64,000 nucleotides of DNA from Mantamonas sphyraenae STR306 (taxonomy: Eukaryota; Protista; CRuMs): assembly GCA_026936335.1 (NCBI GenBank), contig JAPMXV010000001.1, positions 62,001 through 126,000 on the forward strand. Reading direction: 5' to 3'. Both the position numbers and the translations under genes were made by a program. A model generated the notes under the pieces. That model saw nothing but the letters and a program-made list of their open reading frames with translations. It did not search any database and was not told the DNA's origin. Each line of letters opens with the position of its first letter. The stretch's first letter is position 1. This document shows positions 1 to 49,762 of this stretch, piece after piece.

Positions 1-6
1 ACTTCC

Positions 7-3000
7 ATGTGTGCCAACGTCACGTCATGCTACCAGACAGCCACAAGCATCGTTTTCCAGCCAGGCAACACCTTGGACATGACCAACACGACACTCGCCT
101 TGGACGACGATGAGATCAGCGGCGACAAGGTGGAAGGAGGCACCATCGACGCCATCACCATCAACACCTTGGCCTCTGGCCAGGTGAACGCAGACAACCT
201 GCGATTGGATGGCAACACAGTGAGCTCCACGGATGCCAACGGACACATTGTGCTCACGCCCAACGGAGCGGGCAACGTCGTGGTCACAGCTGGCAAGACG
301 CTGGACCTTACAGGAACGACCCTGGTGCTGGACAACGACGAGATCAGCGGAGACAAGGTGGAGGGCGGCACCATCAACGCCATCGCCGTCAACACCTTGA
401 CGTCGGGCCTCATCGACGTCGACAATCTTCGAATCGACGGCAACAGCATCGTGGCCACGAATGCACAGGGAAACATCGTGTTCACTCCGGCTGGAAGCGG
501 ACACGTCGAGGTGTCGCCCGGCAAAGCGCTCGTGGCGGCCAATATCACCGTCATCCTGGACGACGACGAGATCAGCGGTGACGCCATCCGTGGCGGCACC
601 ATCAATGCCACTCTCATCAAGCACACCATTGCACATAAGATTTGGATTGACGACATGCTCATTGACGGCAATCGCATCCAGTCGCGCAACGACTCTGTGC
701 AGCAGCTCGTCATCCGTCCCGAAGGCCAGGCCAACTTCAAGCTCACTCCAGGCGCGTATCTCGATGTACGCAACACCAAACTCGTCATCGATGACGATGA
801 AATCAGCGGCGACAAAGTCGAGGGCGGCACGATTTTCAACATCACCATTCGCCGTCTCGCTTCCGCCCAGATGACCGTGGACAGCCTGCGCCTCGACGGA
901 AACACACTGAGTGGCCTCAACGCACAAGGCCCTGGTGACGTCGTCTTTGTGCCCAAGGGAACTGGCAAGCTCGTGCTGGAGCCTGGTCACGAGCTGGATC
1001 TGCGCGGCACAACCCTGCTGCTTGACGACGACGAGATCAGTGGCGACAAGGTGGAGGGGGGCTCCATCGACCAAATTGCCATCGTCACCATGCTCAGTTC
1101 GCTGATCCATGTGGACAGGCTCAAGCTGGAGAACAACACCCTGAGCACCATGCAAACAAACGGGGACATTGTGCTCACCAGCGCCGGCACAGGCAAGGTC
1201 ACAGCCTCAAGCTACGTGCACGTGGACAACATTCACCTCGACGCAGATCGCATCACCACCCTGGGTGGCAACGTCGACCTCGTGTTTTCCCCCAACGGGC
1301 CGGGTGTGGTCAAGGTTGCGGCGGGCCGCTTCCTGGACTTGCGCAACGCCACCGTCACTCTTGACGACGACGAAATCAGCGGCGACAAGGTCGAGGGAGG
1401 CACCATCAACTCCATCACCATCAACACGCTCAACAACCTGTTTGCGTATGTGGACAACGTGACGCTGGACCAAAACACAGTGGGCACAAGCAACGGCACG
1501 GACCTTGTCATCGAGCCGGCGTCCACCACAGTGGACTTTCAGTCGGGCAAGCAGGTGAACTTTGTGGGCACCACGCTGCTGCTTGATGACGACGAAATCA
1601 GCGGCGACAAGGTGGAGTACGGCACCATCGAAGGCATCACGATCAACACCCTGAGCACAAACCAGATCAATTCGGTGAACATCAACACAAGCCATTTGGA
1701 AGCCATGACGATGTCCAACTCCAAGATGTACGCCACGCAGGTGAATGTGGACTCGCTTATCCTCACCAACGCCACGATCTCGGCCAAGGCAGACCGTGAC
1801 ATCCTGCTTACTCCCAGTGGCTCCGGCGCTGTGCGTGTGGCCGCAGGCGACACGTTGGTGCTCACGGGTGTCACCCTGATCCTGGACAACGACGAGATCA
1901 GCGGCGACAAGGTGGAAGGCGGCACCATCAACGCCATCACGATCAACACGCTGACGTCGGGCCAGGTCAACGCGGACAACCTCCGAATGGACGGCAACAC
2001 CGTTTCGTCAAACAACACCAACGGCAGCATTGTCCTGAGCCCCAACGGGGCTGGCAACGTGGTGGTCACTTCGGGCAAGTCTTTGGACCTCACAAACACG
2101 ACGTTGATTGTGGACAACGACGAGATCAGCGGTGACAAGGTGGAAGGAGGCACGGTGACGGCCATTCGGATCAACACCCTCACGAGCACACAGGCAAACG
2201 TGGGCAACGTGCGCGTACAAGGAAACACGATGTCGACAACGAACGCAAACGGCCATCTGTACGTGTCACCCGGAGCACACGGGTCATCGGGAGCCCTGGT
2301 TGTGCATGCAAACTTCCGCGTGGACCTGCGTACCACGACGCTGCTGTTGGACGACAACGAGATCAGCGGCGACAAGATCGAAGGTGGTCTGATTGACGCC
2401 ATCACGATCAACCGCCTGCAGGTGCACAACATGACCATTGGCCACCTCAGCGTGGACGAAAACACCATTCGTGCAGTCGCAGGCAGCAACGTGCAGTTGA
2501 ACCCGCAGCCAGGAGCTAGTGTGCGCGTGCACGCGGGCCGCACCTTTGATGCACGCAACGTGACGCTGTTGCTGGATACAGACGCCCTGCGCTTCGACAG
2601 CATCGTGGGAGGCACCGTGGACGCCATGACGGCGAAACGCATGGAATCAGCAAACGTGACCGTAGGCGTCGTGCACCTGGACGGCACCACAGTGAACACG
2701 GCCAGCGGATCGATGTCCGACCTGTTGCTGTCGACCAACGGCAGCATTGTGCTGACACCCGGCTTCGCAGCAGACTTGCGTGGCAACACTGTGCTCGTGG
2801 ACGATGACGAGATCAGCGGCGACAAGGTGGAAGGAGGCACGATCAACGCGACGACGGTGACCACGCTTCGTTCGCAGCAGATCCTTGCAGGTGAGCTTTT
2901 GCTGGTCAACGGCACCCTGCGTGCAACGCAGACCTCATTGGTGCTCTCTGCGAGCAATAGCGTGATTCAGGTGACGCCTGGCCTGGTGTTGGACCTGACC

Positions 3001-6000
3001 AACACAGCCAGCATCATGCTGAACGACAACTCGATCAGCGGCGACAAGATCGAAGGCGGACGCATTGCAAACATCACCATCGATGCGCTGTACTCTTCAA
3101 TCATGCGTGTGGGCAACACACGCCTGCAGGACGGCGAGCTTGTGGTGACACAGGGCAGCGGAGACCTGCGCCTGGATGCGGCAGGAAGCGGCAAGGTGCA
3201 CGTGAGCACGTCCGACCTGCGTGTGGGCGTGGTGCATGTGGACCACACCAACGGCGACGTGAGCACTGTGTCGGGCAACCAGAACCTGACCCTGAGTGCA
3301 CATGGATCGGGCAAGGTGCGCGTGGCGCCTGGCGAAACGCTGGATCTGCGCGGCGTGCAGGTGATGCTGGACGACGACGCAATCAGCGGCGACAAGGTGG
3401 AAGGAGGTGCGATGGATACGCTGGTGGTGCACGGAAACGTGAGCGCACGCACAGGCGAGGTGGCGGGTATTAAGGTGTCGCAGCGCGTGACGGATGGAAA
3501 CGACACGGTTGTGTTGGAAAGCGTGAGCACCCAAGGCCGCATTAGCGTGATGCGCTCGGCCACAGAAGGCAATGTGGGCATCGGAACAACGAACCCTCAG
3601 TATCTACTGCAGGTGGGCGACAAGGGACCCACAGAAATCCGATGCGAGGTGGTATGCGGCGTCAATTCCACCGTGACGCGCGTGTGGACGCGCCTGCTGG
3701 GGACCGCTGGGGACGATGCGGCGACAAGCATGGAGCGAGTCGGCGACGACGAGGTGTACATTGGCGGCTGGGTTAGCGGCAAATTGTCCAACCAGACGTA
3801 TCTGGGCGGCGAGGATGCTTTTGTGGCAAGGTACACACAGAGCGGCGTACCCGAGTGGCACACGCAGTTTGGCTCGAGCGCAAACGAGCGAGTGCTTGGC
3901 GTGGCGTCGTTGAGCGAGTTTGGTAGTGTGTACGCCGCCGGGCGTGCTGGCGCTGCGTTTGGAGGAGCGACGTACGCAGGCGGAGCCAGCGATGGGTTTG
4001 TGTCGCGCATCGACGCAGGCAACGGCACTTTGCTGTGGACAAGCATGGTAGGAAGCAGTTCCACAGACGTCCTGGAAGACATTGTGGCCCTGAACGACTC
4101 GTCTGTGGTTGCTTGCGGCCACACGCTCGGCGCGGCCGGCGGATCCAACCAGGGCGGGCGAGACGCATGGCTGGTGAAGCTGGCGGGCAACAATGGAAGT
4201 GTGGTGTGGCAGGTCCAGCTTGGAGGCAGCGGCGAAGACAGGCTCGTTGCGTGCAGTGTCGACTCGCAGACGCAGTCCGTGTGGGCCACAGGGTACACGC
4301 GCTCCACCGACGGCCATCTTGGCGGGACGGGCGGTGATGGGTCACTGGATGTGCTGATGGTGATGGTGAGTGCAGACGGGCAGGTCGAGGTGGTTGCACG
4401 CCAAGCGGCTGCCATGGATCAGCGCGCCCTCGCGGTTGCGGTGAACGAGCTGGGCCATGTGTTTGTGGCCGGTGAGACGGAAGGTCAGTTTATGGACACA
4501 TCGCGCGGAGAACTGGACGCGTTTGTGCTGCGTGTCAACGGCACGGGAGGCTTGGTCTGGGGCACACAGTTTGGCACGGCTGGCAACGATTCCGTGACCG
4601 CGTTGGACACACGAGTGAACGACACCCAACTGTTTGCCGCGGGACGTGTATCTGGAGCCTTTGATGGCCAGCAAGCGTACGGTGACAGCGATGTGCTGGT
4701 GACCGTTTTGGATCAAACGTACGGGAATCGCCAGCGCAGCACGGTGCTGGGCACATCGGCAACAGATCAAGGATTGGCTCTGAGTGCGCACGCAGACGCG
4801 CTGTTTGTGGCAGGCGAGTCACGCAGCGGACTGCAAGGCGTGTCGTTGCAGGGGGCGGCTGGCAGCGATGCGTTTGTGTCGCGTCTGCCCGCTTTGGGCT
4901 GTCCCAACGCAGGTTCACTGTTCTTGGCGCAGGTGGAAGCCAGCGAGGCGGCCACAAGCCACGCGGCGACAGTGGACAACCTGAACAACCGCGTGTGGGC
5001 GGGCCGCGTTGCAGGTGCCCTGCCAGGGCGTACAAGTGCAGGCGGCGATGACCTGGCGGTCATCAAGTACGACACGTTTGGCAACGCCGTATGGATGTTC
5101 CAGAGCGGCAGTGTTGGCGATGACGCCGTGCTTGGCCTGACCGTGGACGAAGAGGACAGCGTGTATGCGTGTGGCGTGGTCGCAAGCAGCTGGTTGGCAC
5201 ATGCTCACAGTGGCGGGAGCGGAAACGACGTGGTGGTGTTTAAACTCGACCGCAACGGCAACGTGGCATGGACCAAGCAAATTGGAAGTGACGGGGACGA
5301 CCGCGCTGCCGGTATCGTCATCGGCGCAGGCGGGTACCTGTACCTCGCAGTTGATTCGACCGGAAACTTTGGCGAACTGGGATTGAACACAAGTAGCCGG
5401 GACGCATACGTGGTCAAGATGGACCCGCGTGACGGCTCTGTGTTGTGGACGCGCCAGCTGCAGGGCCACGAGGCGACGGACGAGCACGTGTACGACCTGT
5501 GCACAGACAGTGCAGGCAGCTTGCTGCTCGTCGGCACGCGCGGAAACGGCAGCAGCATCGACGGAGGACTCGTGGCCAAGATGGACCGAGACGGCACGCT
5601 GTTGTGGTGGATGGTCATTGGCGGCGACGGCCATGACGCAGCACTCGCATGTGCAGCGCACGGCTCGCGCTTGTACGTCGCTGGACGCACGAACAGCACA
5701 TCGCTGAACGGCGAAGCCAATCCGAGTGACACATCGAAGCCGTCGGGTTTCCTGACAGCGCTGAACAACGGCGGCGCAGGCGGATCCATCCTGTGGACGC
5801 GCATGCAGAGCAGCGACAGCGTCGACGAGAGTCGAGGCGTGGCAGTGATGCCCAAGACGGGCGTGATTGTTGTGTCCGGTGTGACGCTCGGTGCCGTGGG
5901 AGGTGTGCACGAGGCTGGCCAGGACGTCTTTGTCGTAGGCTACGACGAGGCAGGCGTACGAGTGTACGCCGAGCAGCTGGGCAGCGTCAGCAACGACACG

Positions 6001-9000
6001 TCGGTTGGACGCGTGAGAAGCGACTGCAACGACCAGTTGTTCCTTGCAGGCAGCAACGCAGGGTCGCTCTTGGGTCACGTCCCTCTGGGTGCAGGATCAA
6101 ACGCACTGTTGCTTGTGCGCAGTGTCGTCGTGCGCCCCGAGGTGCGCAACATTACACAGGTCCTGGGTGTGTACAGCTCTGGAGAGGGTGTTTCCACTCT
6201 GCAAGGATATGTGTGGGCATACGGAGCCCCGACAGTGACTGTCAATGTCACGTGCGCAGGGGCGTGTCAGTTGACCCTGAACCAAGCTGCTGCACCTGGA
6301 GTGAGCGTTCTTGGACAGGGCAGTGCACACGTGTCTTTGGTGGGCTCCGAAAGCTCGGTCAGCGCTGTGTTGCAAACCACGTCTGTTTCCGCTGCAAGCA
6401 CACCACAGAACATCACAGTGTCTGTGAGTGACGGCACCAGCTCCACACAGTACGCAGTGAAACTGGTGCGCATTTGTCCGACCACGGTGGCATACGACGC
6501 GATGGTGGGAGGAGCAGGCGACGACGCATTCGTGGACACCGTGGCCGATGCCTTTGGCAGCATTGTGGCGACGGGCTGGGCAAGCGAAACCATGTATGGC
6601 CAAGCTGTGGCCGGCACGCAGGACATGGCCGTTGTCAAGATGGCACCCGACGGAAGCGTGGCCTGGGCACGTTTGTTCGGAGCCAACGGCGCCGCGTCAG
6701 CGGGTCTTGGGGTCGCCACGGACATTCAAGGCAACGTGTATGCCGTGGGATACACCAACGGGGCCATGAGTGAGCAAACGCCCGCTGGCGAGAGCGACTT
6801 TGTGCTCGTCAAGTTGAGTTTGGACGGGCAGCTGAGGTACGTGCGGCAGTTTGGCACGCCGTACGGCGACAGGCTCACGGCAGTTGTCGCACCAGGGGAC
6901 GGATACCTTTATGTCGTGGGAGACACGTACGGCAACTTTAGCAGCGTTGGGCGTGCACAGGATGTTGTGCTCCTCAAGATCGAGGCATCCACGGGCGCCA
7001 TCGTGTGGAGCCACCAGATTGTGGAAGACGGCACGCAGGCTGCGCAAGGCATCTGTGCTGGATCATCGGACGACCTCTACGTGGTGGGCTACACGCACAG
7101 CAACGTTAGTGGCGAAACGTCAATGGGCAACAGCAGCCAGTTGGTGCTGCGCCTCAGTCGTTCCAGCGGCGCGGTACAGTGGACACGCGTACTGGCGAGC
7201 GAGGGAATCGACGAAGCGCAATCATGCACTGTGCACGGGTCCATGCTGTACGTTGCTGGCTCATCCGCAGGCGCAAGTTCGTTCATGGGTGCAGCGGTGA
7301 CGCAGCAGGACGCGACTCTGGTCCAACTGATGACCAGTACAGGCGCTACACAGTGGGTACGTACGTCCAACCGAGTTGGCACAGAGACAGGCAACGGTGT
7401 CGCAGTCACGGCCGACACGGGCCTGGTGCTGCTTGCGGGAACACGCAACGGAACCACTGGCGACTGGTTCACGCAGGCATACACCGAATCGGGCACGCCG
7501 GGCTGGTCACAATCGTTTGGGCAGGGTGCACACGACGCCCTGAACGCGTTTGGCATTGATTGCAACGGCAAGCTGTTCGCCGTGGGATCCAGCAACGGCA
7601 CCTTTGCAGGCGGGCTGACCAACAGCGGTGGCATGGATGCGGTGGTCAAGGTGTGGCACCGCGGATTCCAGGGTCTCGTCGTCAGCGGCGACCTAGGTTC
7701 AACGGAGGTCGAAAACACGGGGCCGAATGCGGGTGCAGGCGCACCCATAGCTATCGGTGCAACCTACCCTCTCGCACTGGACTACTTTGAAAACTTGGCC
7801 GTCAATATGACTGTGGAGTGTGTCAGTAGCAGCTGCGTGGTGTCGGTTCAAAATGCTGCGGCGGGCAGTGTCGTAAGTGGCAACAATACCGGTTCCGCAA
7901 CTGTGACAGGCTTGGCCGCAAGCGTTCAGGCAGCATGGGCGGCTGTGGTTGTTTCTGTGCCCAAATCGGGCCTGGTAACACGCACCATCACCGACGGACA
8001 GTCTGGGATTCACACACATGTGTTGTCCGTCGTCAACAACGAGTGGCAACTCATGGTCACGGGTTCCGCGTCTCAGGATCTCTTCTATGACTGTGCGGTC
8101 GCACCAGACTCGTCAACGTACTGCGGCGGCTTCGCAGCCGCCGCCGTGGCGGGATACGATTACGCTGGCGGCGAGGACTTGATCTTTGCACACATCCATG
8201 CCAACGGCACCCTGGATTGGTTCGACATGGCCGGTTCCAGTGGGAACGACCGTGTCAGGGGCGTTGCCTACTCGACCACGTCTGACCTCATGTACTCTGT
8301 TGGACATATGGCCGCTTCTGCAATGGGGTTAACCTACGCAGGAGGAGTTGGTCCCGACGCCTTCCTTGTTGCGTACCATACCAACGGCACACGTGCGTGG
8401 GCAAAGTCGTTTGGCAGCACGACGTCGGACTACTTTGAGAGAATGCTTGCATTGGACGACCGCCTGTACCTTGTAGGGTACACGTCCACCACCCCGACTG
8501 AGGGTACAGTGTACGGAACCGTCCAAGGCAGCTTCGACAGCTGGGTGGTGTGCACATACTTGAACGGCACTGTCGACTGGCAGCGCGTCATGGGTGGCAC
8601 TCAAGAAGACCGCTTCAACGGCATCTACCACCACAATGGCACAAACACCCTGTACTTGGGTGGGTTGACAAAGTCGGACAACGGCGATCTTGCCGGAACC
8701 ACAGCCTCCTTTGGCATCTGGAGCGTCATGGTTGTGCACATGGACCTCAACGGCACCGTGCTGAGTACGATTGGCGTTGGCCTTGGAAAAACAGTCATCC
8801 ATCGCGGCCTGGGTGTCCTCGACACGGAGCACATCTACGTGGCTGGGTACTCAGACAACCTGTTGGCAGGCCCGGTTGCAGGTGGCAGCAACGATGCCAT
8901 CTTCATGATGATCAACTACAACGGGACTGTGAAGTGGATGAGGCAGCTGGGCGGACCCGACAGCGACCTGTACGGCGGCGTTGTTGTCTCCGAGTCGGAG

Positions 9001-12000
9001 CGCCGTGTTTGGGTCACAGGATCGACATCGGACTACGCCACCACGTACCCTGGCATCTCGGGAGTGTACAGCATTTTCCACGAGTACCAACCCGAGAGTG
9101 GCCGCGTGTTGAAGGAGTATGCGTTTGGTGGAACCTCAACTGACAAGGCGTTCGGTCTGGTTCGAGGCCCTGCGGGCGATTTCTTTACGTGGGGCTACTC
9201 TTCATCGCAGTTCTACGGCACCTCGCCCGTGGGGTCGCTGGACCCCTTTGTGATCCGCTTCAAAGAGACAGCGACATGCAAGCCAGCCAGGTCGGTTGTG
9301 CGACAGCCTTTCAACACCACTGCAGACGATCGCGCATTTGCAGTGGTTACGCTGTCGACCAACGTAATGGTGGTGGGCGTTGACATCAGCGAGTCCTTGC
9401 CTGGTTTCACTTTCAGCGGTGGTGCAAGCGATTCAGGTGTGGTGGCCTTCGACACTCTGGGCAACCCGGTGTGGTACTACCAGACAGGAGGCGTCGGTGC
9501 AGATTTCGTGCTGGACATGGCCAGGTCATCCAGCGACGACGTGTACGTGGCTGGCACCACGGCCGGGAACATCTTTGCGGCCTCTGCTGGCAGCAACGAC
9601 GCCTACCTGTACAAGCTCAACAGCACGGGCAACCTCCAGTGGGGCATCCAGTTCGGCACTGCTGCTTCGGAACAGATCCGTGGTGTGGAGGTGGGCTCGG
9701 ATGGATTCGTGTACATTGCTGGGTACACGGGGGGCGACCTGAACGGCACCAACGCTGGCCAGGATGACCTTTGGGCAGCCAAGGTCGACCCTTCCACGGG
9801 TGCCATCGTGTGGATGCACCAACGCGGAGGCACAGACATCGACTACACCAGTCGCCTGTGCTTGGATGCGCAGGACAACCTGTATGTGGTGGGTCACACC
9901 CAGAGCAGCTTTGACGGCCAAACGCCGGCCGGTAGCTACGACATGTTTGCCACCAAACTGGACAAGAACGGCAACTTTCAGTGGACGCGCTTCGTGGGCG
10001 ACTCACAATCTGAGCAGCATCCCGGCTGTGCCGTGATTGACGACACCTTGTTTGTGGAAACGACGGTTGCTGCAGGAACCTGGTACGGCCACGCCGGACT
10101 GGGTGGGAATGATATCGGCATGGGTGCCATCAACACTGTGGATGGCACGTTGCGCTGGGCCAAGGTCTTTGGCGGCTCGGCCAATGAGACCTCGCGCTCG
10201 ATGGCCGCCTCGCCCGACGGGTACGTCGTGCTGGGAGTGACCACTGCCTCCTCTTTCCCCGACTACACAATCGTTGGCAGCAACGACGCCGTCGCATTGG
10301 CTGTGAGCACCTCGGGCGAGTACCTGTGGGCCCGTGGAGTGGGTTCCACCTCGGGCGAGACTGTGTACTCGACCGCTGTCGGGTGTGACGGCTCGCCACG
10401 CATGGTCGGGTTGACAAGCGGAGTGATGGAAGAGGGTGTGACTCTGGGTGGCACCTCGGATACCATGGTGGCGACCGTTACCTCTGGCGACGCACCCCCC
10501 ACAGTGACCGGGTTGCCCACTCTGTTGTTCAACACCAGCGCGTTCACTCTTGGTTCCCAGTATCCACTGAAGATCTACGACGGAGACACGCGCCTGCTGA
10601 AGCTGACCGTGTCGTGCTCGGCATGCACCGTGTCGTCGACGGAACTGACGGGCACGGCCTATGTGATCGAGCAGGCGTGGAACGCACTCTCCGTCTCGTT
10701 CAACAACACAGTAGGTGACCAAACCTTCACTGTCCAAGTCACCGACGGCACGTACACGACGTCGTCCCAACTGTTTGTTTCTGGCAAGTGTGGAATGACG
10801 ACGCCGCATGTGGCGCAAATCGGCACGAGCGGCGACGACCGTGCGTTTGCCACGACATTCATGCAGGACGGCTCGATTCTGGTGGCCTCGCGCACAGACG
10901 GTACCTTCCCAGGTCAGAGCAGCGCGGGAGGCGTCGATGCGTACGTGGCCAAGTTTGCGCCGAACGGCACCAACCTGTGGTACAAGATGTACGGCACGGC
11001 GACGGAAGACTCGTTCCTGGGCGGCGATGCATCTGCAGACGGCAAGGCGTTGTTTGTGTCGGGATACTCAAGCGCAGCATTTGAAGGCGCCACGGCTCTG
11101 GGTAACGCGGACATCGTGGTGATGCGCATGGACGAGACAGGCAACAAGGTGTGGGTGCGCCAACTTGGCACGTCGGCCAGCGACAAGGCACGTTCGTGCT
11201 GGCTGAGTGCCGACGAACGCTACCTGTACGTGTTTGCCGAGACGTCCGGGTCGTACGCTGGCACGTTGGCCGGTGTGACGGATCTGCTGCTGCTGAAGCT
11301 GGACGCATCCGACGGAAGCGCGGTGTGGAGCCGCCAAATTGGCAACGCGGCTTCCAACGCCATCATGGCAGGCGTGAAGGACGGTGCAGACAATCTGTAC
11401 ATCGTCAGCTACACGACGGGTGACTTTGACGGCCAGACGAACCAGGGCGGCGCCGACGGACTGGTGATCAAGTACGACAGCGAAGGCAACAAGGTGTGGA
11501 CGCGTCTGTACGGCACAACGGGCGACGACTACCTGTACCGGGCGGCCGTGAGTGACGATGGCAGCTCGTTGCTGCTTGCGGGACGCACCAACGCAGGGAC
11601 TTTTTACGGCCAGACCACAAACGGAGCCTACGACGCAACGGCGCTTGCGGTGAACGCGAGCACAGGAGACGTGATGTGGGCACGTGTGGCCGGCGGCGGA
11701 GGAAACGACAAAGCGTGGGGCGCCGCGATCACGGCTGGCAACAGCTTTGTGGTGGGAATGGATCTTGCAGCAGGCACGGTTCTTCCTGGCCAAACCGAAT
11801 TGGGAGGAGGCGACGCCGGGTACGCGGTGTACAACAGCGCGGGTGATGTGCAAAAGTATGTGCAGTACGGCACGACTTCGGAGGATATTGTGCGCAACGC
11901 GGATGCCAACTGCCGTGGCCAGGTGCTGATCAGTGGTCTGACATCCGGTGCCATGCCTGGCAACACGAATGGTGGCGGACGTGATGCGTATGTGTACACG

Positions 12001-18000: not shown

Positions 18001-21000
18001 TTACGGTGTCGCAACCTGCCAACGCTCCGCTGCAGCATGTCAAGGTCACGCTGTCCGCGGGCTCCACTGTCATTACTCATTCGATTCTGGCACAGAGTCC
18101 CAGCGTCGGAGCGCCGTTTGTCAAGCAGTACAACGGCGCCAGTGGAGTGTCGCGCTTCCAGGGCATGGACCGCAACGCAGCAGGGTCATACTGTATCAGT
18201 GGATTTTCCAACACCGTTGTTATGGGCATTCCCATTGAATCGCCTGCAACGACAGGTGCGATTGTCGGTTTGTTGGACGCATTCGGCAACCTGACCATGG
18301 CCACTCGCGTGACCTCCACAAACTCGGAGTACGGCTCTTCCTGCGCCGTTGCAGACAACGGCAACGTGTACGTGGCAGGCCATACGTTCAGCAACCTCGA
18401 CGGCCAGGGCAACAACGGATCTGCCGATTTGATGTGGGCAGCGGTTGATCACACGGGAAAGCAGTTGTGGACCAAACAAGTGGGCTCGAGTGGCACAGAC
18501 TCGCACACGAAAATCACACTGGCTCCCAATGGCTTCCTGTATGCAGCTGGGGTGGTGCTTGGAAACATCACCGAACTTGGCCTGAATGCACTCAGTGGAG
18601 CTCATGCGAGCGCACTCGTCATGAAGATTGACCCGACCACAGGTGAGCCCGTGTGGGCGCTCATGGATACATTTGCCGAAGGTGCAATCGCACCCTTTGC
18701 CATCACCGCAGACTCGCAGAGCAATCTGTTGTACACAGGTATCGCGGCAGTGCCCATCATGGGCAATGCCAACGCCGGCGGCAACGATATCGTTGTGATC
18801 AAGCGCAACAGCAACGGTGCAATGGTGTGGGGTGTATCTGTCGGTGGGGCCAACGACGACGTGGGCCAGGCCATTGCTCTGAGCATGGATGAAAAGGCCG
18901 TGTACGTGGCCGGCTTCTCTGCCGGCAGCATCATGGGCACGACACACAAAGGAGACAATGACGCAGTGCTGATCCGCTTGGACGCACGCACGGGCGCCGT
19001 GGAGTGGGTGCGATCCATTGGCTCCAGCGCCTCAGACGTGTTTTCACAGGTGACTGTGAACGATGACGGGTCAATCATTGCGGGTGGACAGACAAGTGGC
19101 ACCATCGGCGCAGACACTCCGGTTGGCTCGTCGGATCTTTTCTTTGCACACTTTGACGCCGCAGGAAACCTGCTTGGAACGAAGATGCAGGGAGGTGCGG
19201 GCACGGAAAGCGCGTATCATCCATCTGTCGGCAACCCGTTCACATCGACTCTGTTCGTGGTTGGTCAGACAGACGGCGCCTTCCAACCGCAGTTCAGTGA
19301 CTCGGGCAACGCATACGACGCCATCATCGGTTCGGCGTCATTCCCCAAGGTGCCCACGGTGAGTGGCCTGCCGCGGTGGATGTATGCCAGCACCGAGTCG
19401 GTGGGCGCACAGTACCCGCTGGCCATCGCAGACGCAGATAGCAGTGTGCTCACGATGGGCATTGCGTGTGCGGGCTGCAACATCAACGGCACGGGCTTGA
19501 GCAGCACGAGCACCACTGGATCGCCGGCAGCCCTGATGGCCGCCTGGTCTGCGGTGCGCATTGCATTTGACGTCCAAACCAACGCCGCGACACAGTTGAC
19601 GGTGACGGTATCGGACGACGTGGCCAACATCACCACGTCGACGTACATTCGTCCCTGCGGCTCCGTGCCAGCGACCTTTGTGGTGCAATACGGAAGCAGC
19701 GCGAGCGAACGCGTGTTTGACATTGAGGTGGGCATGGACGATGCGGTGTATGCTGGTGGACACACAAACAGCGCCCTGAATGCGTCAGGGCCTACCCCTA
19801 CGGGATGGGGGGCCTACGTGCGCAAGTTCAATGCCACAGGCGGCGAAGCGTGGACGTACATGTTTGACACCGCAAGTACGGATACCAACTACAACTTTGT
19901 GTTGGACAGCGCTGACAACGTCTACTTTCCCTCTGGTGGAGGGGACGTGTATTTGTCCAAGATCTCCTCGTCTGGCACGCAGCTGTGGCAACGTGCTGTG
20001 TTGGTTGGAAACGGCCTGGATTGGGTCTATGGCACGGTAATGACCACAGACGAGAAGTACATCTTCTTGGTGGGAGCGTCGACTTCCACTGATCTCGGGT
20101 TCACGCCGCAAGGCAATGATGTTTGGGCGTCCAAGATCAGCGCTGCCACAGGAGAAATCGTGTGGTTGGACTCATTTGGGACGGCCAACGACGACTCCTG
20201 GATGTCATGCGACGTCGACAGTCTCGACAACCTGTACGCGGTGGGCAGATACAACATATCAACCGACAGCTCGTTTGCGGTGACCAAGTACTCGCCCATG
20301 GGATCACGCGTGTGGACGACGGTCATTCCAAACACAGGGGCTTCCAACGAATTCCGGGCTGCGTTCTATCGCGCAGGGCGACTGTACCTCGCGGGGATTT
20401 TGCACGGCCCCAGTCTCGTTGGCGGTGCGGTGAACCCTGGCTCTCCGACGCAAGTGGGCGTGTTGATGGCCATGGATGCGACGACAGGTACGGTGCTGTG
20501 GTCCACCGCCTTGGGTTCGGGATCCAAGGTCGCTGCCTCCCTTTCGATGACCTCCAACGGCCACTTGCTCGTCCCAATTGCCGATGGCTCCGATTCCACC
20601 GGCGTCGCCTTGTACACAACGGAAGGTCAGTACCTCGACACCAAGACTGTCCTGGCGACTGGCGGATTGTGGATGTACGCAGTGGAGGCCATGTGTGGCA
20701 CTCAGGCCGCTGTCGGTGGAATCTTGAGCGGTAACTATGCTGTGAACGGCGCCTCAGGTGTCCCTGGCGCCACTGACAGTTGGGTGGCGGTTGTCAACCT
20801 GCCCATTCCCATCCTTGGATTGCCGTCGTACGTGGACGTGGGCACTGTGAACGTGGGTGCGTTGTATCCGCTGACGGTGCTGCACGAAGGCAGGCCATTG
20901 AACCTCACTGTGTCGTGCAGTTCGTGCAATCTGAAGGGCACGGGTCTGCAGAGCCTGCAACTTGCAACCGGTGCCACAGCACAGCAGGTGGCCCAGGCGT

Positions 21001-24000
21001 GGAGCACGTTGACTGTGCAGTTTGACAGCAACAAGGCGGGCGAGGCCCTGCAGGTCATTTTGGGCGTGGATGGATACACGTCCACCAAGACTGTGCCTGT
21101 GCATGGTGCGTGTGGCTATGGCCCGGCGACAAACTTTGTGGCCAGCATCGGCACAAGTGCAGACGACCGCGCCACCTCGATGGCCACGGATGCCAGTGGC
21201 AATGCCTACGTGAGTGGATACTCAACCGTGGCGGTGTCGGCGGGCTACACGGTGCAGGGGAGCAACGATCTGTTTGTGCGAAAGTACAACAGCAGCGGGT
21301 TGGAGGCGTGGACGTTCCAGACGGGCGGCGCAGGCAACGATGTCGCGGACGCCGTCCTGGTCGACGGTTTGGGCAACGTGTACATCGTGGGTCGCACCAA
21401 CGGCGACCTTAACGGAAAGACCATCACCGGCGGGGTGGACATGGTTGTGATGAAGCTGACCAGCAGTGGTACTCTTGTGTGGACCACCATGTTTGGCGGT
21501 GTCAACGACGACCTTGCACGCGCCGGTGTACTGTCGCCTGAGGGCGACTACGTGTACGGCGTGGGCCACACCAAGAGCAACCTGAGTGCAATCAACGCAG
21601 GCGAAGACGACATGGTGGCGTTCAAGGTGCGCACCTCGGACGGAACACTGATGTGGACGCGTCAGGTGGGCGGCAGCGCTGCAGACCTGGGATTGTCCGC
21701 GTGTGTGGATCCACGCACAGGCGACCTCTTCCTGGTTGGCGAGACGTCGTCGCCCACCATTGCCGGACAGAGTGCATTTGGCCTCCAGGATTCGCTGGTG
21801 GTCAAGTACGACCCCAATGGCAACATGGTGTGGAGCAAGGTGTACGGAGCAGCCGGAGGCGAGCAGACGTTCGGCTGCGCCTTTGACGCAGCCAGTGACA
21901 CACTGTACGTCGGTGGGTCGACTTCCAGCTCGACCTGGTACGGCCAGACCCGCGGCGGTGGACCCGATGCATCTGTGTTGGCCATCAACAGCACCGATGG
22001 AGGCGTGCTGTGGGGCCGATTGATGGACAGCGGGGCAAGCGAGTTTGTGGCCGGGTTGACCGTGCTTGATTCGGGTCACGTGGTGGCCGGCGGTTCGACA
22101 CAGGGCTCGTTGCCTGGCCAGCCGTTGAAGAACGCCGATGGCAACTACGACCTCTTTGTGGCCACGCTGACAAGCAGTGGCGAGGTGGTGCAAATCATCC
22201 AACAGGGCGTGTCGGGCACGGAAGTGACCAGCCACATCGCCGGTCGATGCAACAACCAGGTGGTGCTGAGCGCCAGGATGCAATCTGCACTGCCTGGCAC
22301 CACCTACGCAGGCGGTGGCCACGATGCGTACGTGGAGCGCCTGCAAGTGATGCAGCCGAGGCTGACGGGTCTGCCGGCTTCCGCGAATGCCGACACGTTC
22401 TCCGGTGCCACGCATGCCCTGCGCATCCTGGACACCGATCCGTCGCAGGTCATGAACCTGACTGTTTCGTGTGTCGGATGCAACGTGAACGGCACAGGCG
22501 GCAGTTCGCTGCAGCAGGTTGGCACAGCCGCCCAGCTGGAGGCCGCGTGGAAGACGCTGTCGTTTGCGCTCCAAACAGGCCAAACGAGTGATGTGCTGAA
22601 CGTGCAGGTCACGTACGGCGCCGTGTCGGGCACCTTTACAACGCGTATGGGCAAGTGTGGATTGACGACGCCGCATGTGGCGCAAATCGGCACGAGCGGC
22701 GACGACCGTGCGTTTGCCACGACATTCATGCAGGACGGCTCGATTCTGGTGGCCTCGCGCACAGACGGTACCTTCCCAGGTCAGAGCAACGCGGGAGGCG
22801 TCGATGCGTACGTGGCCAAGTTTGCGCCGAACGGCACCAACCTGTGGTACAAGATGTACGGCACGGCGACGGAAGACTCGTTCCTGGGCGGCGATGCATC
22901 TGCAGACGGCAAGGCGTTGTTTGTGTCGGGATACTCAAGCGCAGCATTTGAAGGCGCCACGGCTCTGGGTAACGCGGACATCGTGGTGATGCGCATGGAC
23001 GAGACAGGCAACAAGGTATGGGTGCGCCAACTTGGCACGTCGGCCAGCGACAAGGCACGTTCGTGCTGGCTGAGTGCCGACGAACGCTACCTGTACGTGT
23101 TTGCCGAGACGTCCGGGTCGTACGCTGGCACGTTGGCCGGTGTGACGGATCTGCTGCTGCTGAAGCTGGACGCATCCGACGGAAGCGCGGTGTGGAGCCG
23201 CCAAATTGGCAACGCGGCTTCCAACGCCATCATGGCAGGCGTGAAGGACGGTGCAGACAATCTGTACATCGTCAGCTACACGACGGGCGACTTTGACGGC
23301 CAGACGAACCAGGGCAGTGCCGACGGACTGGTGATCAAGTACGACAGCGAAGGCAACAAGGTGTGGACGCGTCTGTACGGCACAACGGGCAACGACTACC
23401 TGTACCGGGCGGCCGTGAGTGACGACGGCAGCTCGTTGCTGCTTGCGGGACGCACCAACGCAGGGACTTTTTACGGCCAGACCACAAACGGGGCCTACGA
23501 CGCAACGGCGCTTGCGGTGAACGCGAGCACAGGAGACGTGATGTGGGCACGTGTGGCCGGCGGCGGAGGAAACGACCTGGCGTGGGGCGCCGCGATCACG
23601 ACTGGCAACAGCTTTGTGATGGCAATGGATCTTGCAGCAGGCACGGTTCTTCCTGGCCAAACCGAATTGGGAGGAGGCGACGCCGGGTACGCAGTGTACA
23701 ACAGCGCGGGTGATGTGCAAAAGTATGTGCAGTACGGCACGACTTCGGAGGATATTGTGCGCAACGCGGATGCCAACTGCCGTGGCCAGGTGCTGATCAG
23801 TGGTCTGACATCCGGTGCCATGCCTGGCAACACGAATGGTGGCGGGCGTGATGCGTATGTGTACGCGTTCACTGTGGATTCTTTGGCCATCAAGGGCTTG
23901 CCGGACTGGATCAAGGCGACGTCGGGCACAATCACCCTCGCTTCGCACCCGATCACTGTGGTTGACTTTCAGGACGCAATGTTGACACTCACCGTTGCGT

Positions 24001-27000
24001 GTACCCATTGTCAGCTGAATGGCACGGGCGGCACGCTGTTGGCGCTTAGTGGTGCGAACGACACCAAGGTTGTGCTGGCTGGTTCTGCGCAACAATTGCA
24101 AGACACGTGGCGAACAATGACCGTGGGTATGAGTAGGCTGTATTCGAACGACACGCTGAATGTGACTGTCTCCAATGGACAGCTGAGCAGCACCTACACT
24201 GTGGACCTGCTGCAGTGTGGCGTGCTGTCCGCGCCCACAACCTCGCAGTTTGGCACTGGCGCAGAGGATGCAGCGGTAGCCGGGACAGTCGCTCTGGATG
24301 GTGGACTTGTCTCGCTGGTGAGAACAACCGGTGCATTCGATGGCCAGAGCCACGCCGGAGGGGTGGACACGTATGTGCGACGCACAAACGCTCAGGGTGC
24401 GGTCGAATGGGCGCAGCAGTTTGGCTCCGCTGGAGATGATGTGCCTTCCGATGTCGTTGCAGACTGCATGGGCAACGTCTTTGTGGTTGGCACCACCAAT
24501 GGCTCGTTGGCCGGTTCCAGTGCCAATGGCACGGATGTGTTTGTGGCCAAGCTGAATGTCACCGGCCACCTAGTGTGGCTCGTGCAAATTGGCAGCAACT
24601 ACACAGACGTGGGTGTCAATGTGGCTCTTAGCCCAAGTGAGACCGAAGTGTACGTGGGCGCAACGACTTTTGGCTCCATGCAGGGGATCAACTTGGGCAT
24701 GTCTGACTTTGTGCTGCTGAAGCTGCGCTCCAGCGACGGCAGCCAAGACTGGGTACGCCAGGGTGGCAGTGCTGGAGCAGACCATGCGCGAGGCGTGTGT
24801 GTCGGCTCGGATGGTGTTGTTCACGTGGTGGCTCAGTCGAGTTCGGCCGTGAACGGTGTGGTTGGGGCCGGTGCCACCGACGTCGTGGTGGTCTCGTACA
24901 ACAGCACCGGTGGAGTGTTGTCCACGCGCATGTATGGCACAAGCATGCATGAGAATGCCACGGGCTGCTCCATGCTCGCAGACACCCTCTTTGTGTCGTA
25001 CGATGCCACCAACGTGGCGACGTCGTCCGAGACCGAGCTGGGTGTGCTTGCTGTGGACGTGCAGTCTGGCTCCCTTTTGTGGAAAACCACTGTGCTGGTG
25101 TCTTCCATGCCGCTGACAAGCACTTCTGGCGTTTCAGCAGCGCCGAATGGCCGTGTGTTTGTGACCGGCCGCCACGCAGGCGCAGGCTTCTATGCCAACT
25201 TGCACGCGGCCACAGGCACCATGTCAACCCGAGGAGTGGTTGCACTCGAGGCTCAGAGCAGCCACGTACACGGCGTTTCCGCTGGCTGCAACAACCAAGT
25301 GTTGCTTGTGGGCGAGGCATCGTCGGCGCTGTCTGGACAGACGTACGCCGGAGGAAGCTCCGATGCGTGGTTGATGTCACTGCGCGCAGATGTGGCCGTC
25401 ACGTTCTCGGGCATGGCAGGCCCTGTGGCTGTTGAGCGTGTCGGTGACACCGTGGCCCCGCTCACAGGCGCAGTTCTTGTGGACGCCGTGTCGTTTGATG
25501 GCGACACCTACGCAATCAACGTGACGTGTGTGGGCTGCAATGTGTCCGTGCCTGCGCTCGCTGCAGATGCCACACTAGCCCAAGCACAAGCCACACTGCG
25601 CGGCGTCACTCTGACGCTGAACGAGGCTGCTGGTGCCCTTTATGTGGCAGTGCGTGATGGCACAGCGTGGTCACCCACCCAAGAGGTCAGCGTGCGTGTG
25701 GTGTGCCCCAGCCCTACATACGGTACAACCACGTTCAGCACCAGTGCCAACGACACGCTGAGCGATGTGGCATTGGACACATTCAACACGGCGCTTGTTT
25801 CCGGGCGCGTGGACGGCAAAGCGACTGTGCGCAGTGTGCTGCCGCAGGGTGTGGTCCAGTGGACGCACAGCCACAACGGTGGCAATGGGACGGCGACTCG
25901 TGTGGCCGTCGACGCACAGCGTCATGTGCTGTACACTTACCAGGCACAGAATTCGACCGCAACATCGTCAGTGATCCGCGTGGTTAAACTTACACCTGGT
26001 GGAAGCCTTGTGTGGGATGTGACGCAGACGTCGGGCGAGTACAACGTAGATGTGGCAACGGCAGTTGCTGTAGGCCCGACCAATGACGTGTTTGTGGCCG
26101 GTTACACCAACGGAAGCCTGGTGGGCAGCAACGCAGGAGGCACAGACACAGTGCTACTGCGCCTGGCCTCGAGCACGGGTGCAGTCATGTGGACCCGACA
26201 AACGGGTGCAAACCAAGACGATCGTGCAACGGACGTTTGCGTCGACAGCAGCGGCAACGCATACGTGGTGGGATCTGGAGCTGCGAATGGACAGGCAAAC
26301 GCAGACGTGTTGGTGTCCAAGTACGACAGCTCAGGCAATCTGACGTGGGTGCAGCTGTATGGCGGTGCGGGCGATGAGGAAGCCACCAGCTGCGTGGTGC
26401 ACGGCACGCGTGTGTATGTGGGCGCAAACACGCCCAGTACCAACTTTTTGTCTCACGTGAATCTGCCATCCGGCAGCAAGGGTGCTGTCCTTGCACTGGA
26501 CACAAGCACAGGCGCGGTTGTGTGGACACAGGTGTTTGCCCATGGCAGTGCTGAGCGTGTGGACGTCCACAACGGCCACACACTGCTCGTGGCAGGCAGC
26601 ACACCGACCGCAGACTGGACCGTTTCTGCGTTTGCGCTGATCAACGGCCAGTACGCGTGGACACACACGGAGGGTGGCACAGGCGCCGACGAGTTGACAG
26701 CTTTGGCGACCGACTGCACAGGCAACCTGTGGCTTGCGGGCAGCAGCAGCGCGGTCGGAGGTGCGCCCTGGGAGATGAAGGTGATGGAGCGTGGCAACCG
26801 TCCACCCATTGTGTCTGGCCTCCCTGCCTCCGTCACCGTGTTTGCGCAGGTGGACTTTGTGTTGAGCTCGCTGTATCCGATGGCCATCAGCGACGTAGAC
26901 GTGACCCATGCCGATCTGATGAGTCTGAACGTCACGGCCGCCCACAATGAGTGCCAAGTGTTTATCACCTCGTACTCGGGTGTGAGCTTTGTCGACGAGA

Positions 27001-27743
27001 GTCTGAACGGAAACACGTCCTTGCGTATGCAAGGCACGCTGAATGCGCTCAACGCAGCCCTCAACTCGCTGCTGGTGCGCTGTCCCGATGCAGAGGCCAA
27101 CGAAACACTGGTGATTCGCATCTCGGACGGTGGGTCCAGCGGGCGAGCATACAGCAGCATGTCCACAGACGGCCGTGAGATGACCACGTCCTACAATGTG
27201 ACGGTGCATGTCCAACGATGCGAGTTTTACAGCAAGGCGTGCGGCCCGAAGCTCATCGAAACGCCAGACGTACTCGCCGTGGCCAATGCCTGGAACTTGT
27301 TCTCGGACGAGCGACTCAAGACCGATGTGCAGACCATTGCACCGGAGAAGGGCATGGAGCTGCTGCGACAGCTGCAGGCTGTACGCTTCCGCTGGAAAGA
27401 CAACGAGCGTGCCGACATCGGCTTCATTGCTCAGGAAGTGGAAAAGGTGGTGCCGGAGCTGGTGAGCACAGGTAGCGATGGCGTAAAGTCCCTGAAGTAC
27501 GCCAACCTGGCACCGATTCTGGTGCAGGCGCTGCAACATCAGCAGCTGCGCGACGCCGAACTCCTGCAGGCCAAGCTGGCACAGGTTCAGGATCTGGAGA
27601 GCAAGGTCGCTGAAAAGAAGCAGCTGCTTGACAAGGCTCAACAGCGTGTGCAACACATGGAACACATGTTGGAAATCCTCGAGCAGCGCGCTGCCGCCAA
27701 GAAGTTGCAAACGACGCAAGACTCATCCGCAGAAGAGTCGTGA
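7..27743 (+). CDS. Giant (about 9,245 aa) intronless fibre/adhesin-like protein: tail-fibre-like repeats, about 16 SBBP beta-propellers with spacer domains, C-terminal peptidase S74 chaperone. Probably 5'-partial; one frameshift at about 16331
   Basis: ORFs 7..16494 and 16401..27743 join if one C is added at 16331-16332 (GGC ACC [C]TC AGT GGA TAC ACG CTG CAG GGG ACG TAT GAC), which restores a normal blade 'GTLSGYTLQGTYDTFAAVFTAQGELLYVEQ'. Both ORFs share the module architecture and a near-identical 1.23 kb module. The frame is open from base 1 and no signal peptide is visible at the first Met. Confidence 0.85.
85..3430 (+). repeat. 14 protein-level repeats of about 75-110 aa with core LDDDEISGDKVEGGTIxAITIxTL and, in many units, VDNLRLDGNT...NGxIVLTPNG (tail-fibre-shaft-like)
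   Basis: Core motif counted 14 times in the translation, one copy degenerate (DTDALRFDSIVGG). The DNA core gacgagatcagcggcgacaaggtggaagg recurs with synonymous divergence. Confidence 0.85.
10783..12012 (+). repeat. Direct repeat copy 1 (propeller module 6), near-identical to 22650..23879
   Basis: 1,230 bp align without gaps at offset 11,867, with roughly 18 substitutions counted by eye (about 98% identity). Confidence 0.95.
22650..23879 (+). repeat. Direct repeat copy 2 (propeller module 14)
   Basis: Same sequence as 10783..12012, from ggcaagtgtgga to ttcactgtggat. Confidence 0.95.
27291..27743 (+). other. Peptidase S74 / intramolecular chaperone auto-processing (ICA) domain followed by a coiled coil
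   Basis: WNLFSDERLKTDVQTI...LRQLQAVRFRWKD...IGFIAQEVEKVVPELV...KSLKYANLAPILVQALQ, with Ser (27303) and Lys (27318) in SDxRLK spacing. Heptad-like tail LQAKLAQVQDLESKVAEKKQLLDKAQQRVQHMEHMLEILE. Confidence 0.92.
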
Positions 27744-48100: not shown

Positions 48101-49762
48101 GTCACCAGGCGCTGCTGAAGGGGCGGCGCAGGTCGCGGCCGCAGTTGTCGCTGTTGGATGTGCCTGTGGACGAGGAGGAAGACGGGAGCGTTGTTGCACT
48201 GGGCACACGCTCGCCAAGGAGGCTGTCTGGCGTGGACGAGCTGGGCAACGATTGGGACAAGTGGAACGACGCAGGCGTGTCGCTGATCATGCCATCGGTG
48301 TCCACTGCGGCTGACGAAGGCGACGGGAAAATCAGCAAGGCGTCGTCGACCCTTGCCAGTCCGTTGCGTTCGGCTCGTTCGACGTCAAGACCCGGACCGA
48401 TGCGTCCGCCTGCGGGGCTGGGACGTCGTCGCTCGAGTGTGGCTGCTACGACGCCGCTGTGGTCGGCAAGTTCGACCAACGAAAAGCTTGCGTTCCTGAA
48501 TCCGGCGGCGTCGGAGGATGTGGGCGCAGGCGGCGGAGTGAGTCCGAGCAGATCGATGCGACGAAGCAGCAGCGCAAGCAACGAGGTGGATGTGAAACGT
48601 TGGGGCAAGTTGCGATCGATGCTGAGCAGGTCATCGACGCCGACAACGTTGTTGGGACAGGTGCGCACAGCAGGATCGACGCCGATGGACAGTTCGACGC
48701 CGCAGCCGTCGACAGTGAGCAAGTTCCAGCTGGACATGGTGGAAGAACTGGAGGACGAAGGGTCGGATGTGGGTGTGCCAGAGTATGTGGAGAACAGCGT
48801 GGGCAAGGTGGGCTATGTGAAGTTGGTGCGTGTCCTGTCGCTGTTCCAAGGCTCGATGGACCGTGTGATGTCTGCGTTGAAGGAGGCAGATTGGCCAGTG
48901 GGGACGGAAATGGTGCGCAAACTGGTGGGAGCCCTGCCCGATCCGGACACGGTGGCCGCAATTCGCCGCGAGATTGCAGCCGCAGGCCTGACCGAAGACT
49001 CGCCCGAACTCGTCCTGCCGCTGCGTTTGGTGTTGCAGGTGGATGCTTTGGGCGACGGAAGGGAGCGTGCGCGCAGTCTGCTGTACCACAAGAAATTGAT
49101 GCAAGGACTGACGGAGGCGGAGATGAAGGCCGAGCTGTTGGAAACGGCGTTTGGAGAGATGGTGTCGTCACGCACGCTGTCCGAGGTGCTGGAGCTACTG
49201 GGCAATGTGATGCGAAAGCAGGTGACCCCTGCCGAAGGGGTGGAGGTGCCAGCGGGAGGGTTTGAGTGGTCGCAGCTGGCGACGCTGGACACGCTCAAGA
49301 CACGACGTGGACGCACGACAGCGCTGCAGTTTGCCCTGACGATGAGCGAGCAACAGTTGGACGAGGACGACTTTTCGGCGGAGATCAGCCACCTGAAGGA
49401 GGCTGCAGGCTGTGGGTAGTGAGTGGACGGTGCAGATGGTGCAGCGACTGGGCAAGTACCTGAAACCTGTGGAGTGGCACCTGAGCCATGAGGTGGAGGA
49501 AGAGACGGACGACCAGTTTTGGAAGTGGATGATGGAGAACGTGCAAGCACACCGACATCGCCTTGTGACGGTGGCCAACACCATCGACAAGATCAACCAG
49601 GGATGCCGCAACTTTGTGAGCGACTTTGTACGCAGCGACGACTCGGTGGACTTTAGCCATGTGTTTGGCAACCTGTGGGCGTTTGCAGAGATGTGGAACA
49701 CGGACGAGAATGATGATGGCGCGGACGAGGAAGATGGAGAGGCTTGGAGTGTGATTATGTGA
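36124..49762 (+). CDS. Giant (about 4,510 aa) multi-pass membrane GT4 glycosyltransferase, Gtb3/PelF-like, with C-terminal FH2-like domain; exons 36124-37329 and 37434-49762, frameshifts at about 48003-48005 and 49408-49409
   Basis: Acidic disordered N-terminus; phase-0 intron gtgcgt...cactgac...cag; SFCIYLG...FDMLVLDP; two clusters of hydrophobic TM segments (about 41000-41580 and 42150-42830); DSGTWP..GGVASCRRDLV; ASHH...WDHGMLWRER (PelF/DUF3492-like); GT-B EX7E motif NSSKSEGLPLALGEAGLAGLPVVCTDVGG at about 46815-46900. Confidence 0.8.
48790..49720 (+). other. Degenerate formin-homology-2 (FH2)-like domain
   Basis: Motifs in FH2 order and spacing: LVGALPDPDT (cf. L..FLP..EE), RERARSLLY, AFGEMVSSRTLSEVLELLGNVMR (cf. 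S..L..LL..IL..GN.MN), AGGFEWSQLATLDTLKT..GRTTALQF (cf. A.GF.L..L.KL.D.K....TLLHY), EISHLKEAA and, after the frameshift, DDQFWKWM and VFGNLWAFAEMW. Confidence 0.7.

What the first reader, a model, noticed from the sequence alone, without database searches (positions are those of the whole stretch)
7..27743. Giant eukaryotic fibre built on a phage tailspike plan: fibre repeats, 16 propellers and a self-cleaving S74 chaperone
Seen: a single intronless frame of at least 9,245 aa among ordinary intron-containing eukaryotic genes, with a C-terminal SDERLK...GFIAQEV domain and coiled coil. Established: S74/ICA domains drive trimerisation of phage tailspikes and fibres, then cleave themselves off using a Ser-Lys dyad. 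The characterised eukaryotic examples are MYRF/MrfA transcription factors, which this is not. Inference: the cell makes a homotrimeric fibre of roughly 2.8 MDa displaying up to about 48 propellers. It could be an adhesive thread, prey-capture filament, flagellar hair or extrusome component derived from phage or bacterial parts. I know of no described eukaryotic protein with this architecture.
Basis: partly seen in the sequence, partly recalled or inferred. Interest (0 to 1): 0.92.

Follow-up and report, generated by a model that had tools for sequence, protein, structure and literature searches.

The report
Protist's giant phage-style secreted fibre
A bacteria-eating marine flagellate (Mantamonas sphyraenae) has a normal nuclear gene for a roughly 10,300-residue secreted protein built like a phage tail fibre with a self-cleaving folding helper, with a chain of 16 propeller domains inserted into one small loop; I found no comparable eukaryotic protein described.

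Summary
Real, with corrections. The genome matches Mantamonas sphyraenae exactly. The gene is neither a single frame in this assembly nor intronless. It starts 3.5 kb before the window with a signal-peptide exon and two predicted introns. The assembly lacks one base at 16,330 that contigs of all four runs carry. Predicted product: about 10,327 aa, with 23 or more phage-type fibre repeats, 16 seven-bladed SBBP propellers, 13 cadherin-like spacers and a C-terminal S74 with its Ser-Lys dyad; no membrane anchor. Neighbours are ordinary eukaryotic genes. A run inferred to be poly-A RNA covers the tested 5.8 kb. A shorter paralogue and bacterial S74 fibres have an uninterrupted tip. Here 7,887 residues of propellers sit inside that tip's six-residue turn, so they should loop off the fibre axis. 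The array is 98-99% identical to part of another giant gene. Closest known system: Bdellovibrio MAT prey-binding fibres; MYRF and polinton-virus membership fail. Trimerisation, cleavage and adhesive role are inferred, not shown. Other readers of this scan already noted the paralogue and the insertion in this genome.

The parts
1..27743 (+). Window part of the long last exon. The gene begins upstream of the window (window = C1:62001-126000): exon 1 C1:58485-58653 (ATG, signal peptide, small CxxC domain), intron 105 nt, exon 2 C1:58759-58845, intron 171 nt, long exon from C1:59017 with 10 further fibre repeats
   Evidence: hydropathy 2.94 over 15 residues; same layout in the paralogue. Splicing is inferred from sequence, not from reads
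1..45 (+). End of a Cys-rich, sequon-dense insert (about 200 aa, 34 Cys, 24 sequons; begins about C1:61440) in the turn of fibre repeat 10; absent from the paralogue.
46..3567 (+). Fibre shaft, window part: 13 of the 23 strict ISGDKVEGG-type repeats of about 76 aa (26 HMM hits in the whole gene)
   Evidence: relatives in phage genes; AF2 monomer pLDDT 85, extended chain, only weak matches, mostly to trimeric beta-fibres
3568..3618 (+). First half of the fibre tip (GNVGIGTTNP...LQVG), resembling the MAT capping-loop motif
3619..27269 (+). Inserted array of 7,887 aa: 16 seven-bladed SBBP propellers (starts at 3655, 4900, 6472, 8026, 9271, 10786, 12322, 13846, 15358, 16590, 18099, 19656, 21111, 22653, 24216, 25701) and 13 cadherin-like spacers; two Cys at each end
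16329..16331 (+). One-base gap in the assembly inside propeller 9; frame changes from +1 to +3
   Evidence: extra base in contigs of four runs; near-identical C25 copy is in frame
8044..23879 (+). Stretch shared at 98-99% DNA identity, in three blocks, with a giant propeller gene on contig 25; propellers 6 and 14 are 98.5% identical to each other
   Evidence: pN/pS 0.45
27270..27302 (+). Second half of the fibre tip (VLAVANAWNLF), directly before the cleavage site
27303..27743 (+). Peptidase S74 / ICA chaperone with Ser (27303) and Lys (27318), GFIAQE motif and helical tail; predicted released fragment 146 aa, 16.6 kDa; stop at 27741-27743

Best explanation
A host nuclear gene for a secreted, glycosylated homotrimeric beta-fibre adhesin. 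Inferred working: the signal peptide sends three chains into the ER. The C-terminal S74 domains trimerise through their helical tails and start the intertwined fibre. Because the propeller array lies inside a turn, the two halves of the tip must rejoin, perhaps clamped by the cysteines at the ends of the insert. Each chain then throws out a loop of 16 propellers while the fibre zips towards the N-terminus (about 140 nm if it rises like Bd3182). The Ser-Lys dyad cuts off a 16.6-kDa chaperone. The product is a long stalk with a head of up to 48 propellers, most likely a multivalent binder of bacterial prey or substrate, a eukaryotic counterpart of Bdellovibrio MAT fibres. Shown: architecture, continuity of frame, host context, insertion point. 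Strongly inferred: transcription, secretion. Inferred from family knowledge: trimer and cleavage. Weakest step: the ligand and the role.
For: S74 above cut-off with both catalytic residues. Signal peptide, no TM segment. Sequons in the array 96 against a shuffled mean of 68, 0 of 1000 shuffles as high; prokaryotic SBBP relatives are at 0.83 of expectation. 13 of 16 propellers have a Cys at the start and one in the last blade. AF2 module pLDDT 95, seven blades plus Ig-like domain, best match CylK propeller Z 53. Uninterrupted tip in the paralogue and in bacterial S74 proteins at 55-68% identity, including a Bdellovibrionota genome. The same repeat with a C-terminal S74 in a T4-like phage beside neck and terminase genes. 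MATs are signal peptide + fibre + S74 adhesins of a bacterial predator (PMC10769870), and mantamonads feed on prokaryotes (PMC10492846).
Against: No trimer model, proteomics, localisation or binding data. No membrane anchor, so how it would be held on the cell is unexplained. Folding across a 7,887-aa insert has no precedent that I found. SBBP propellers have no established ligand. No orthologue found in any other eukaryote. RNA identity of run X1 is by elimination. pN/pS of 0.45 against the C25 copy shows only moderate constraint.
Confidence: 0.58

Rival explanations
1. Same secreted trimeric fibre, but structural rather than a prey adhesin: a cell-coat filament, flagellar hair, extrusome content or gliding-trail scaffold, possibly co-assembling with the short paralogue and the other giant propeller proteins.
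For: No anchor; apparently high transcript depth; several anchorless giant propeller proteins share modules; Mantamonas glides.
Against: Propellers are only about 28% identical to each other and modules are swapped between genes, which fits varied binding better than a uniform lattice. I found no ultrastructure report of hairs or extrusomes, but the search was shallow.
Confidence: 0.2
2. The insertion uncoupled the chaperone: S74 only tethers three chains (or is vestigial) and does not cleave; the fibre folds another way, for example with the short paralogue.
For: Only 11 tip residues remain next to the S74; in endoNF cleavage needs an Arg of the folded upstream helix.
Against: Dyad, GFIAQ motif and both tip halves are conserved; uninterrupted bacterial tips have a similar sequence before the Ser; MYRF cleaves without stalk residues.
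Confidence: 0.13
3. A relic fibre gene of an integrated polinton-like or giant virus, or a foreign contig joined by mis-assembly.
For: PLVs commonly carry S74 fibres of up to 3.9 kaa (PMC12220804); the repeat's relatives are largely viral.
Against: Flanks are CDC20, NUDIX, NCBP3, GARS1, RhoGAP, formin; no A32 ATPase in the genome; signal peptide and introns; GC 0.59-0.63 and GC3 0.71-0.78 like neighbours; paralogous modules on many contigs.
Confidence: 0.03
4. The frame break is real: a truncated allele, two genes, or programmed frameshifting.
For: The assembly shows it; contigs drop rare variants and the region is duplicated on C25, so one broken haplotype cannot be fully excluded.
Against: All contigs covering the site in four runs have the extra base; their codons (AGC, AAC) differ from C25 (AGT); the X1 contig across the site lacks 11 of 17 C25-specific letters. 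The assembly has similar indels in the paralogue.
Confidence: 0.03
5. A secreted decoy or trap for viruses, or an enzyme array (CylK-like propellers).
For: Viral-type shaft; best structural match is an enzyme's propeller.
Against: CylK needs its N-terminal calcium-binding domain for the active site, which is absent here; propellers share no invariant column; no evidence on viruses of this host.
Confidence: 0.03

Closest known systems
Bdellovibrio bacteriovorus MAT (mosaic adhesive trimer) fibres, S74 subgroup (PMC10769870)
   Same: Signal peptide, long beta-fibre, capping-loop motif, C-terminal S74 with SDxxxK; cellular, not viral; made by a predator of bacteria; mosaic modules.
   Different: Eukaryotic, with introns, sequons and cysteine pairs; ten times longer; shaft repeat not shown to be shared; 16 propellers looped out of the tip instead of a tip cleft or terminal adhesin domain; two S74 genes rather than 13.
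Phage tail fibres and tailspikes with S74/ICA (endoNF, T5, S16 gp37; T4-like P0065)
   Same: Shaft repeat family and S74 chaperone.
   Different: Host-encoded and secreted; no virion genes nearby; propeller array.
MYRF / MrfA
   Same: Eukaryotic S74/ICA with Ser-Lys dyad.
   Different: No NDT80 domain, no transmembrane helix; predicted lumenal or extracellular rather than cytosolic cleavage.
Polinton-like virus and giant-virus S74 fibres (PMC12220804)
   Same: Large modular fibre with repeated binding domains and terminal S74, found in protist genome sequences.
   Different: Those lie inside viral elements; this gene has host neighbours, a signal peptide and introns, and other modules.
SBBP propellers (PF06739); CylK C-terminal domain
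   Same: Seven 57-residue blades; rmsd 1.9 A over 381 residues.
   Different: Tandem array of 16 with cadherin-like spacers; no CylK N-terminal domain.

Membership tests
Peptidase S74 / ICA | Pfam PF13884 above cut-off at the C-terminus | tested here: met
   58 bits against 22, E 1.2e-15
Peptidase S74 / ICA | Ser-Lys dyad (S-D-x-x-x-K) and conserved Gly of the GFIAQ motif | tested here: met
   dyad defined
Peptidase S74 / ICA | C-terminal trimeric coiled coil | tested here: inconclusive
   heptad-like helical tail seen by eye; no coiled-coil program or trimer model
Peptidase S74 / ICA | Trimer-dependent self-cleavage | not testable with these tools
   needs protein work
Bdellovibrio MAT | N-terminal signal peptide | tested here: met
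   hydropathy and layout; no dedicated predictor run
Bdellovibrio MAT | Conserved beta-rich domain of about 130 aa after the signal peptide | not tested
   no MAT sequence was aligned; the region here is shorter and carries a CxxC
Bdellovibrio MAT | Capping-loop motif V-G-(x)-G/N-x-x-x-P-x-x-x-L before the S74 | tested here: met
   window 3568-3618 resembles the printed consensus with one extra position, but is 7,887 aa from the S74
Bdellovibrio MAT | Bacterial surface protein of about 1,000 aa | tested here: not met
   eukaryotic, about 10,300 aa; works like a MAT, not filed as a member
Bdellovibrio MAT | Binds prey surface glycans | not testable with these tools
   no binding data
MYRF / MrfA | NDT80 DNA-binding domain before the ICA | tested here: not met
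   no Pfam hit in the window part of the protein; the genome-wide search was uninformative
MYRF / MrfA | Transmembrane helix after the ICA | tested here: not met
Polinton-like virus fibre | Located in a viral element with capsid, ATPase and integrase genes | tested here: not met
   host genes on both sides; no A32 ATPase; capsid genes not searched separately
SBBP propeller | PF06739 repeats forming a seven-bladed propeller | tested here: met
CylK alkylases | N-terminal calcium-binding beta-roll completing the active site | tested here: not met
   structural match covers only CylK 249-655; requirement

The most novel reading that the evidence does not exclude
A eukaryote has adopted the phage/Bdellovibrio S74 fibre as a self-maturing secreted scaffold that works in the ER, and uses one turn of the tip as an insertion site for an 8,000-residue, exchangeable propeller cassette, giving a 3-MDa stalk with 48 variable binding heads for catching bacteria or gripping surfaces.
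Probability: 0.45. Interest if true: 0.9.

Novelty: new variant of a known kind. Interest (0 to 1): 0.8.

Why it matters
The characterised eukaryotic S74 proteins I found are MYRF-type transcription factors; other S74 fibres in protist sequence belong to viruses. A host-encoded secreted S74 fibre would show the chaperone-protease working in the secretory pathway, give a molecular candidate for prey or surface recognition in a deep-branching bacterivore, and parallel Bdellovibrio MATs across domains. The natural pair (short fibre and fibre plus insert) makes testable how a triple beta-fibre folds across a huge loop.

Tried and rejected
Single frame in the assembly: rejected. Start at window 7: rejected. 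Contamination or viral context: rejected. Read differences as simple alleles: not used as selection evidence, since most match the C25 copy. S74 tree: mostly unresolved; the two Mantamonas domains did not group and no donor can be named. No PDB sequence match for the shaft, no cultured-phage match, no significant structural match in the PDB for the monomer model and one unnamed viral match at E 8.6e-05. Length-matched search for large relatives gave three unrelated SBBP mosaics without S74; that tool sees only 0.55-1.75 times the query length. No eukaryotic orthologue recognised in metagenome or viral scans. NDT80 genome search uninformative. Searches failed on input and were not repeated. The spliced model was not joined for any search: pieces were searched by reference and the length is exon arithmetic. 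In scripts the two frames were annotated with X at the break.

Full report
Source. The window is C1:62001-126000 of a 25,061,354-base, 78-contig genome. The FALCON assembly of Mantamonas sphyraenae has 78 contigs of mean length 321,299.41, which gives the same total (PMC10492846). The organism is a diploid marine gliding flagellate of the CRuMs group that feeds on prokaryotes.

Observation. The six-frame scan shows two open frames, 1-16491 and 16314-27740, not one. The change falls inside a propeller blade at about 16,330. Contigs of four public runs all carry one extra base there: listed as insertions in X1, X2 and X3 and as loose ends in X2, X3 and X4; none shows the assembly's form. The region is also present at 98-99% identity on contig 25, so I checked whether the contigs came from that copy. 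C25 is in frame with codon AGT, the runs give AGC or AAC, and the X1 contig across the site lacks 11 of the 17 C25-specific letters. The gap is therefore most likely an assembly error. The runs come from the same study as the assembly, so they are not independent isolates.

Gene model. The first frame is open for 1,005 more codons upstream. Before that lie an ATG at C1:58485 with a hydrophobic signal-type peptide, and two phase-1 GT-AG introns of 105 and 171 nt that join in frame; exon arithmetic gives about 10,327 aa, 1.06 MDa.

Expression. The paper lists four runs for this species: PacBio, paired-end, mate-pair and poly-A RNA. At the short stretch unique to this locus X2 and X3 have depths 50 and 39, which double in the duplicated part and together fit the stated 115x Illumina coverage. 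X4 has depth about 8 with scattered indels, as expected of PacBio. X1 has depth 490 at the unique stretch, does not double, has no contig over 20 kb and shows a TruSeq adapter end. X1 is thus probably the RNA run and this locus the expressed copy. This is inference; the tool labels all four as 'DNA?', and only 13800-19600 was laid.

Architecture. (1) 23 strict fibre repeats of about 76 aa, 10 of them upstream of the window, with a 200-aa Cys-rich insert in repeat 10 that the paralogue lacks. (2) A tip motif at 3568-3618. (3) 16 propellers and 13 spacers. AlphaFold gives one module as a seven-bladed propeller plus an Ig-like domain at pLDDT 95; the nearest solved structure is the CylK propeller, Z 53; the last spacer resembles bacterial cadherin-like domains. 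Propellers are about 28% identical to each other, except 6 and 14 at 97%. (4) S74 with Ser and Lys in place. There is no transmembrane segment. Sequons are enriched in the array (96 against 68; 0 of 1000 shuffles) but not in prokaryotic relatives, and 13 of 16 propellers have a cysteine at the start and one in the last blade. This fits adaptation to the secretory pathway.

The insertion. The only other S74 found in the genome lies at C1:144-151 kb. It has a signal peptide, the same repeats and no propellers, and its tip runs straight from the VGIGT..P..LLQVG motif through six residues to the strand that ends at the NAWNLF-SD cleavage site. Bacterial S74 proteins have the same uninterrupted tip at 55-68% identity, among them a Bdellovibrionota genome, Paludibacter and a proteobacterial genome with four copies. 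In the giant both halves are kept, 7,887 residues apart. The uninterrupted form is thus the older one and the array is an insertion in a turn. Two cysteines flank each end of the insert; a disulfide clamp is a guess.

Where the parts come from. The shaft repeat matches uncharacterised proteins of phages and some bacterial contigs, one of them a 2,120-aa T4-like phage protein with a terminal S74 beside neck and terminase genes. The propellers match mostly prokaryotic SBBP proteins at about 30%. Within Mantamonas the propeller-spacer module has spread over many contigs, with frames of 10,699, 10,900, 7,123 and 6,665 aa; blocks are shared almost unchanged with C25 (pN/pS 0.45). The S74 tree does not resolve a donor. 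GC and GC3 match host genes, and the neighbours are CDC20, NUDIX, NCBP3, GARS1, RhoGAP, a glycosyltransferase, formin and RTEL1. No viral packaging ATPase was found.

Mechanism. From what is known of S74 domains I infer that three chains meet through the C-terminal helices in the ER, the split tip re-forms, the shaft intertwines, and the dyad releases a 146-aa fragment. The monomer model of three repeats is confident but has few internal strand pairs, and its weak matches are mostly trimeric beta-fibres; this fits an obligate trimer but does not prove one. At the rise of Bd3182 (550 A for about 780 residues) the shaft would be about 140 nm. The most likely role is multivalent adhesion to prey or substrate; a structural coat or hair role is the main rival. 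How an anchorless fibre is held on the cell is unexplained.

Comparison and novelty. It works most like the Bdellovibrio MAT fibres but is not filed as a member. It fails the MYRF tests and the polinton-like virus context test. Four literature searches aimed at this question found no host-encoded secreted S74 fibre in a eukaryote; the library is incomplete, and unstudied database entries may exist. Verdict: a real gene, a new variant of the S74-chaperoned fibre, surprising in host, size and topology; function untested. Interest 0.8.

Noticed in passing
G000:C1:143911-151092 (L007, L008): Short paralogue: signal peptide, introns, the same fibre repeats and an S74, no propellers; several frame changes in the assembly, probably indel errors. 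The simplest test case for a eukaryotic S74 fibre.
   Followed up: partly
G000:C25:176108-211401, C67:7058-28426, C26:134170-166869, C30:24967-44961: Other giant propeller-spacer proteins (6,700-11,000+ aa) with different ends: beta-helix-like tails on C25, C67, C30 and several hydrophobic, TM-like segments on C26. The C25 gene seems to start with a signal peptide.
   Followed up: partly
window 10783-12012 and 22650-23879: Propellers 6 and 14 are 98.5% identical in DNA while all other pairs are 22-44% identical in protein: recent copy or conversion.
   Followed up: partly
window 37218-48311: 3,698-aa open frame with DUF3492 and Glycos_transf_1 domains near its end, a PelF-like glycosyltransferase arrangement.
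   Followed up: no
L040, L041, L042, L045 (genome LJ_bin-0460) and L044: Bacterial genomes with MAT-like S74 fibres sharing the Mantamonas tip; one has at least four copies.
   Followed up: partly
window 16330; C25 near 208,100; C1:144-151 kb: Single-base indels split long genes in this assembly, so its giant genes are probably under-annotated.
   Followed up: partly
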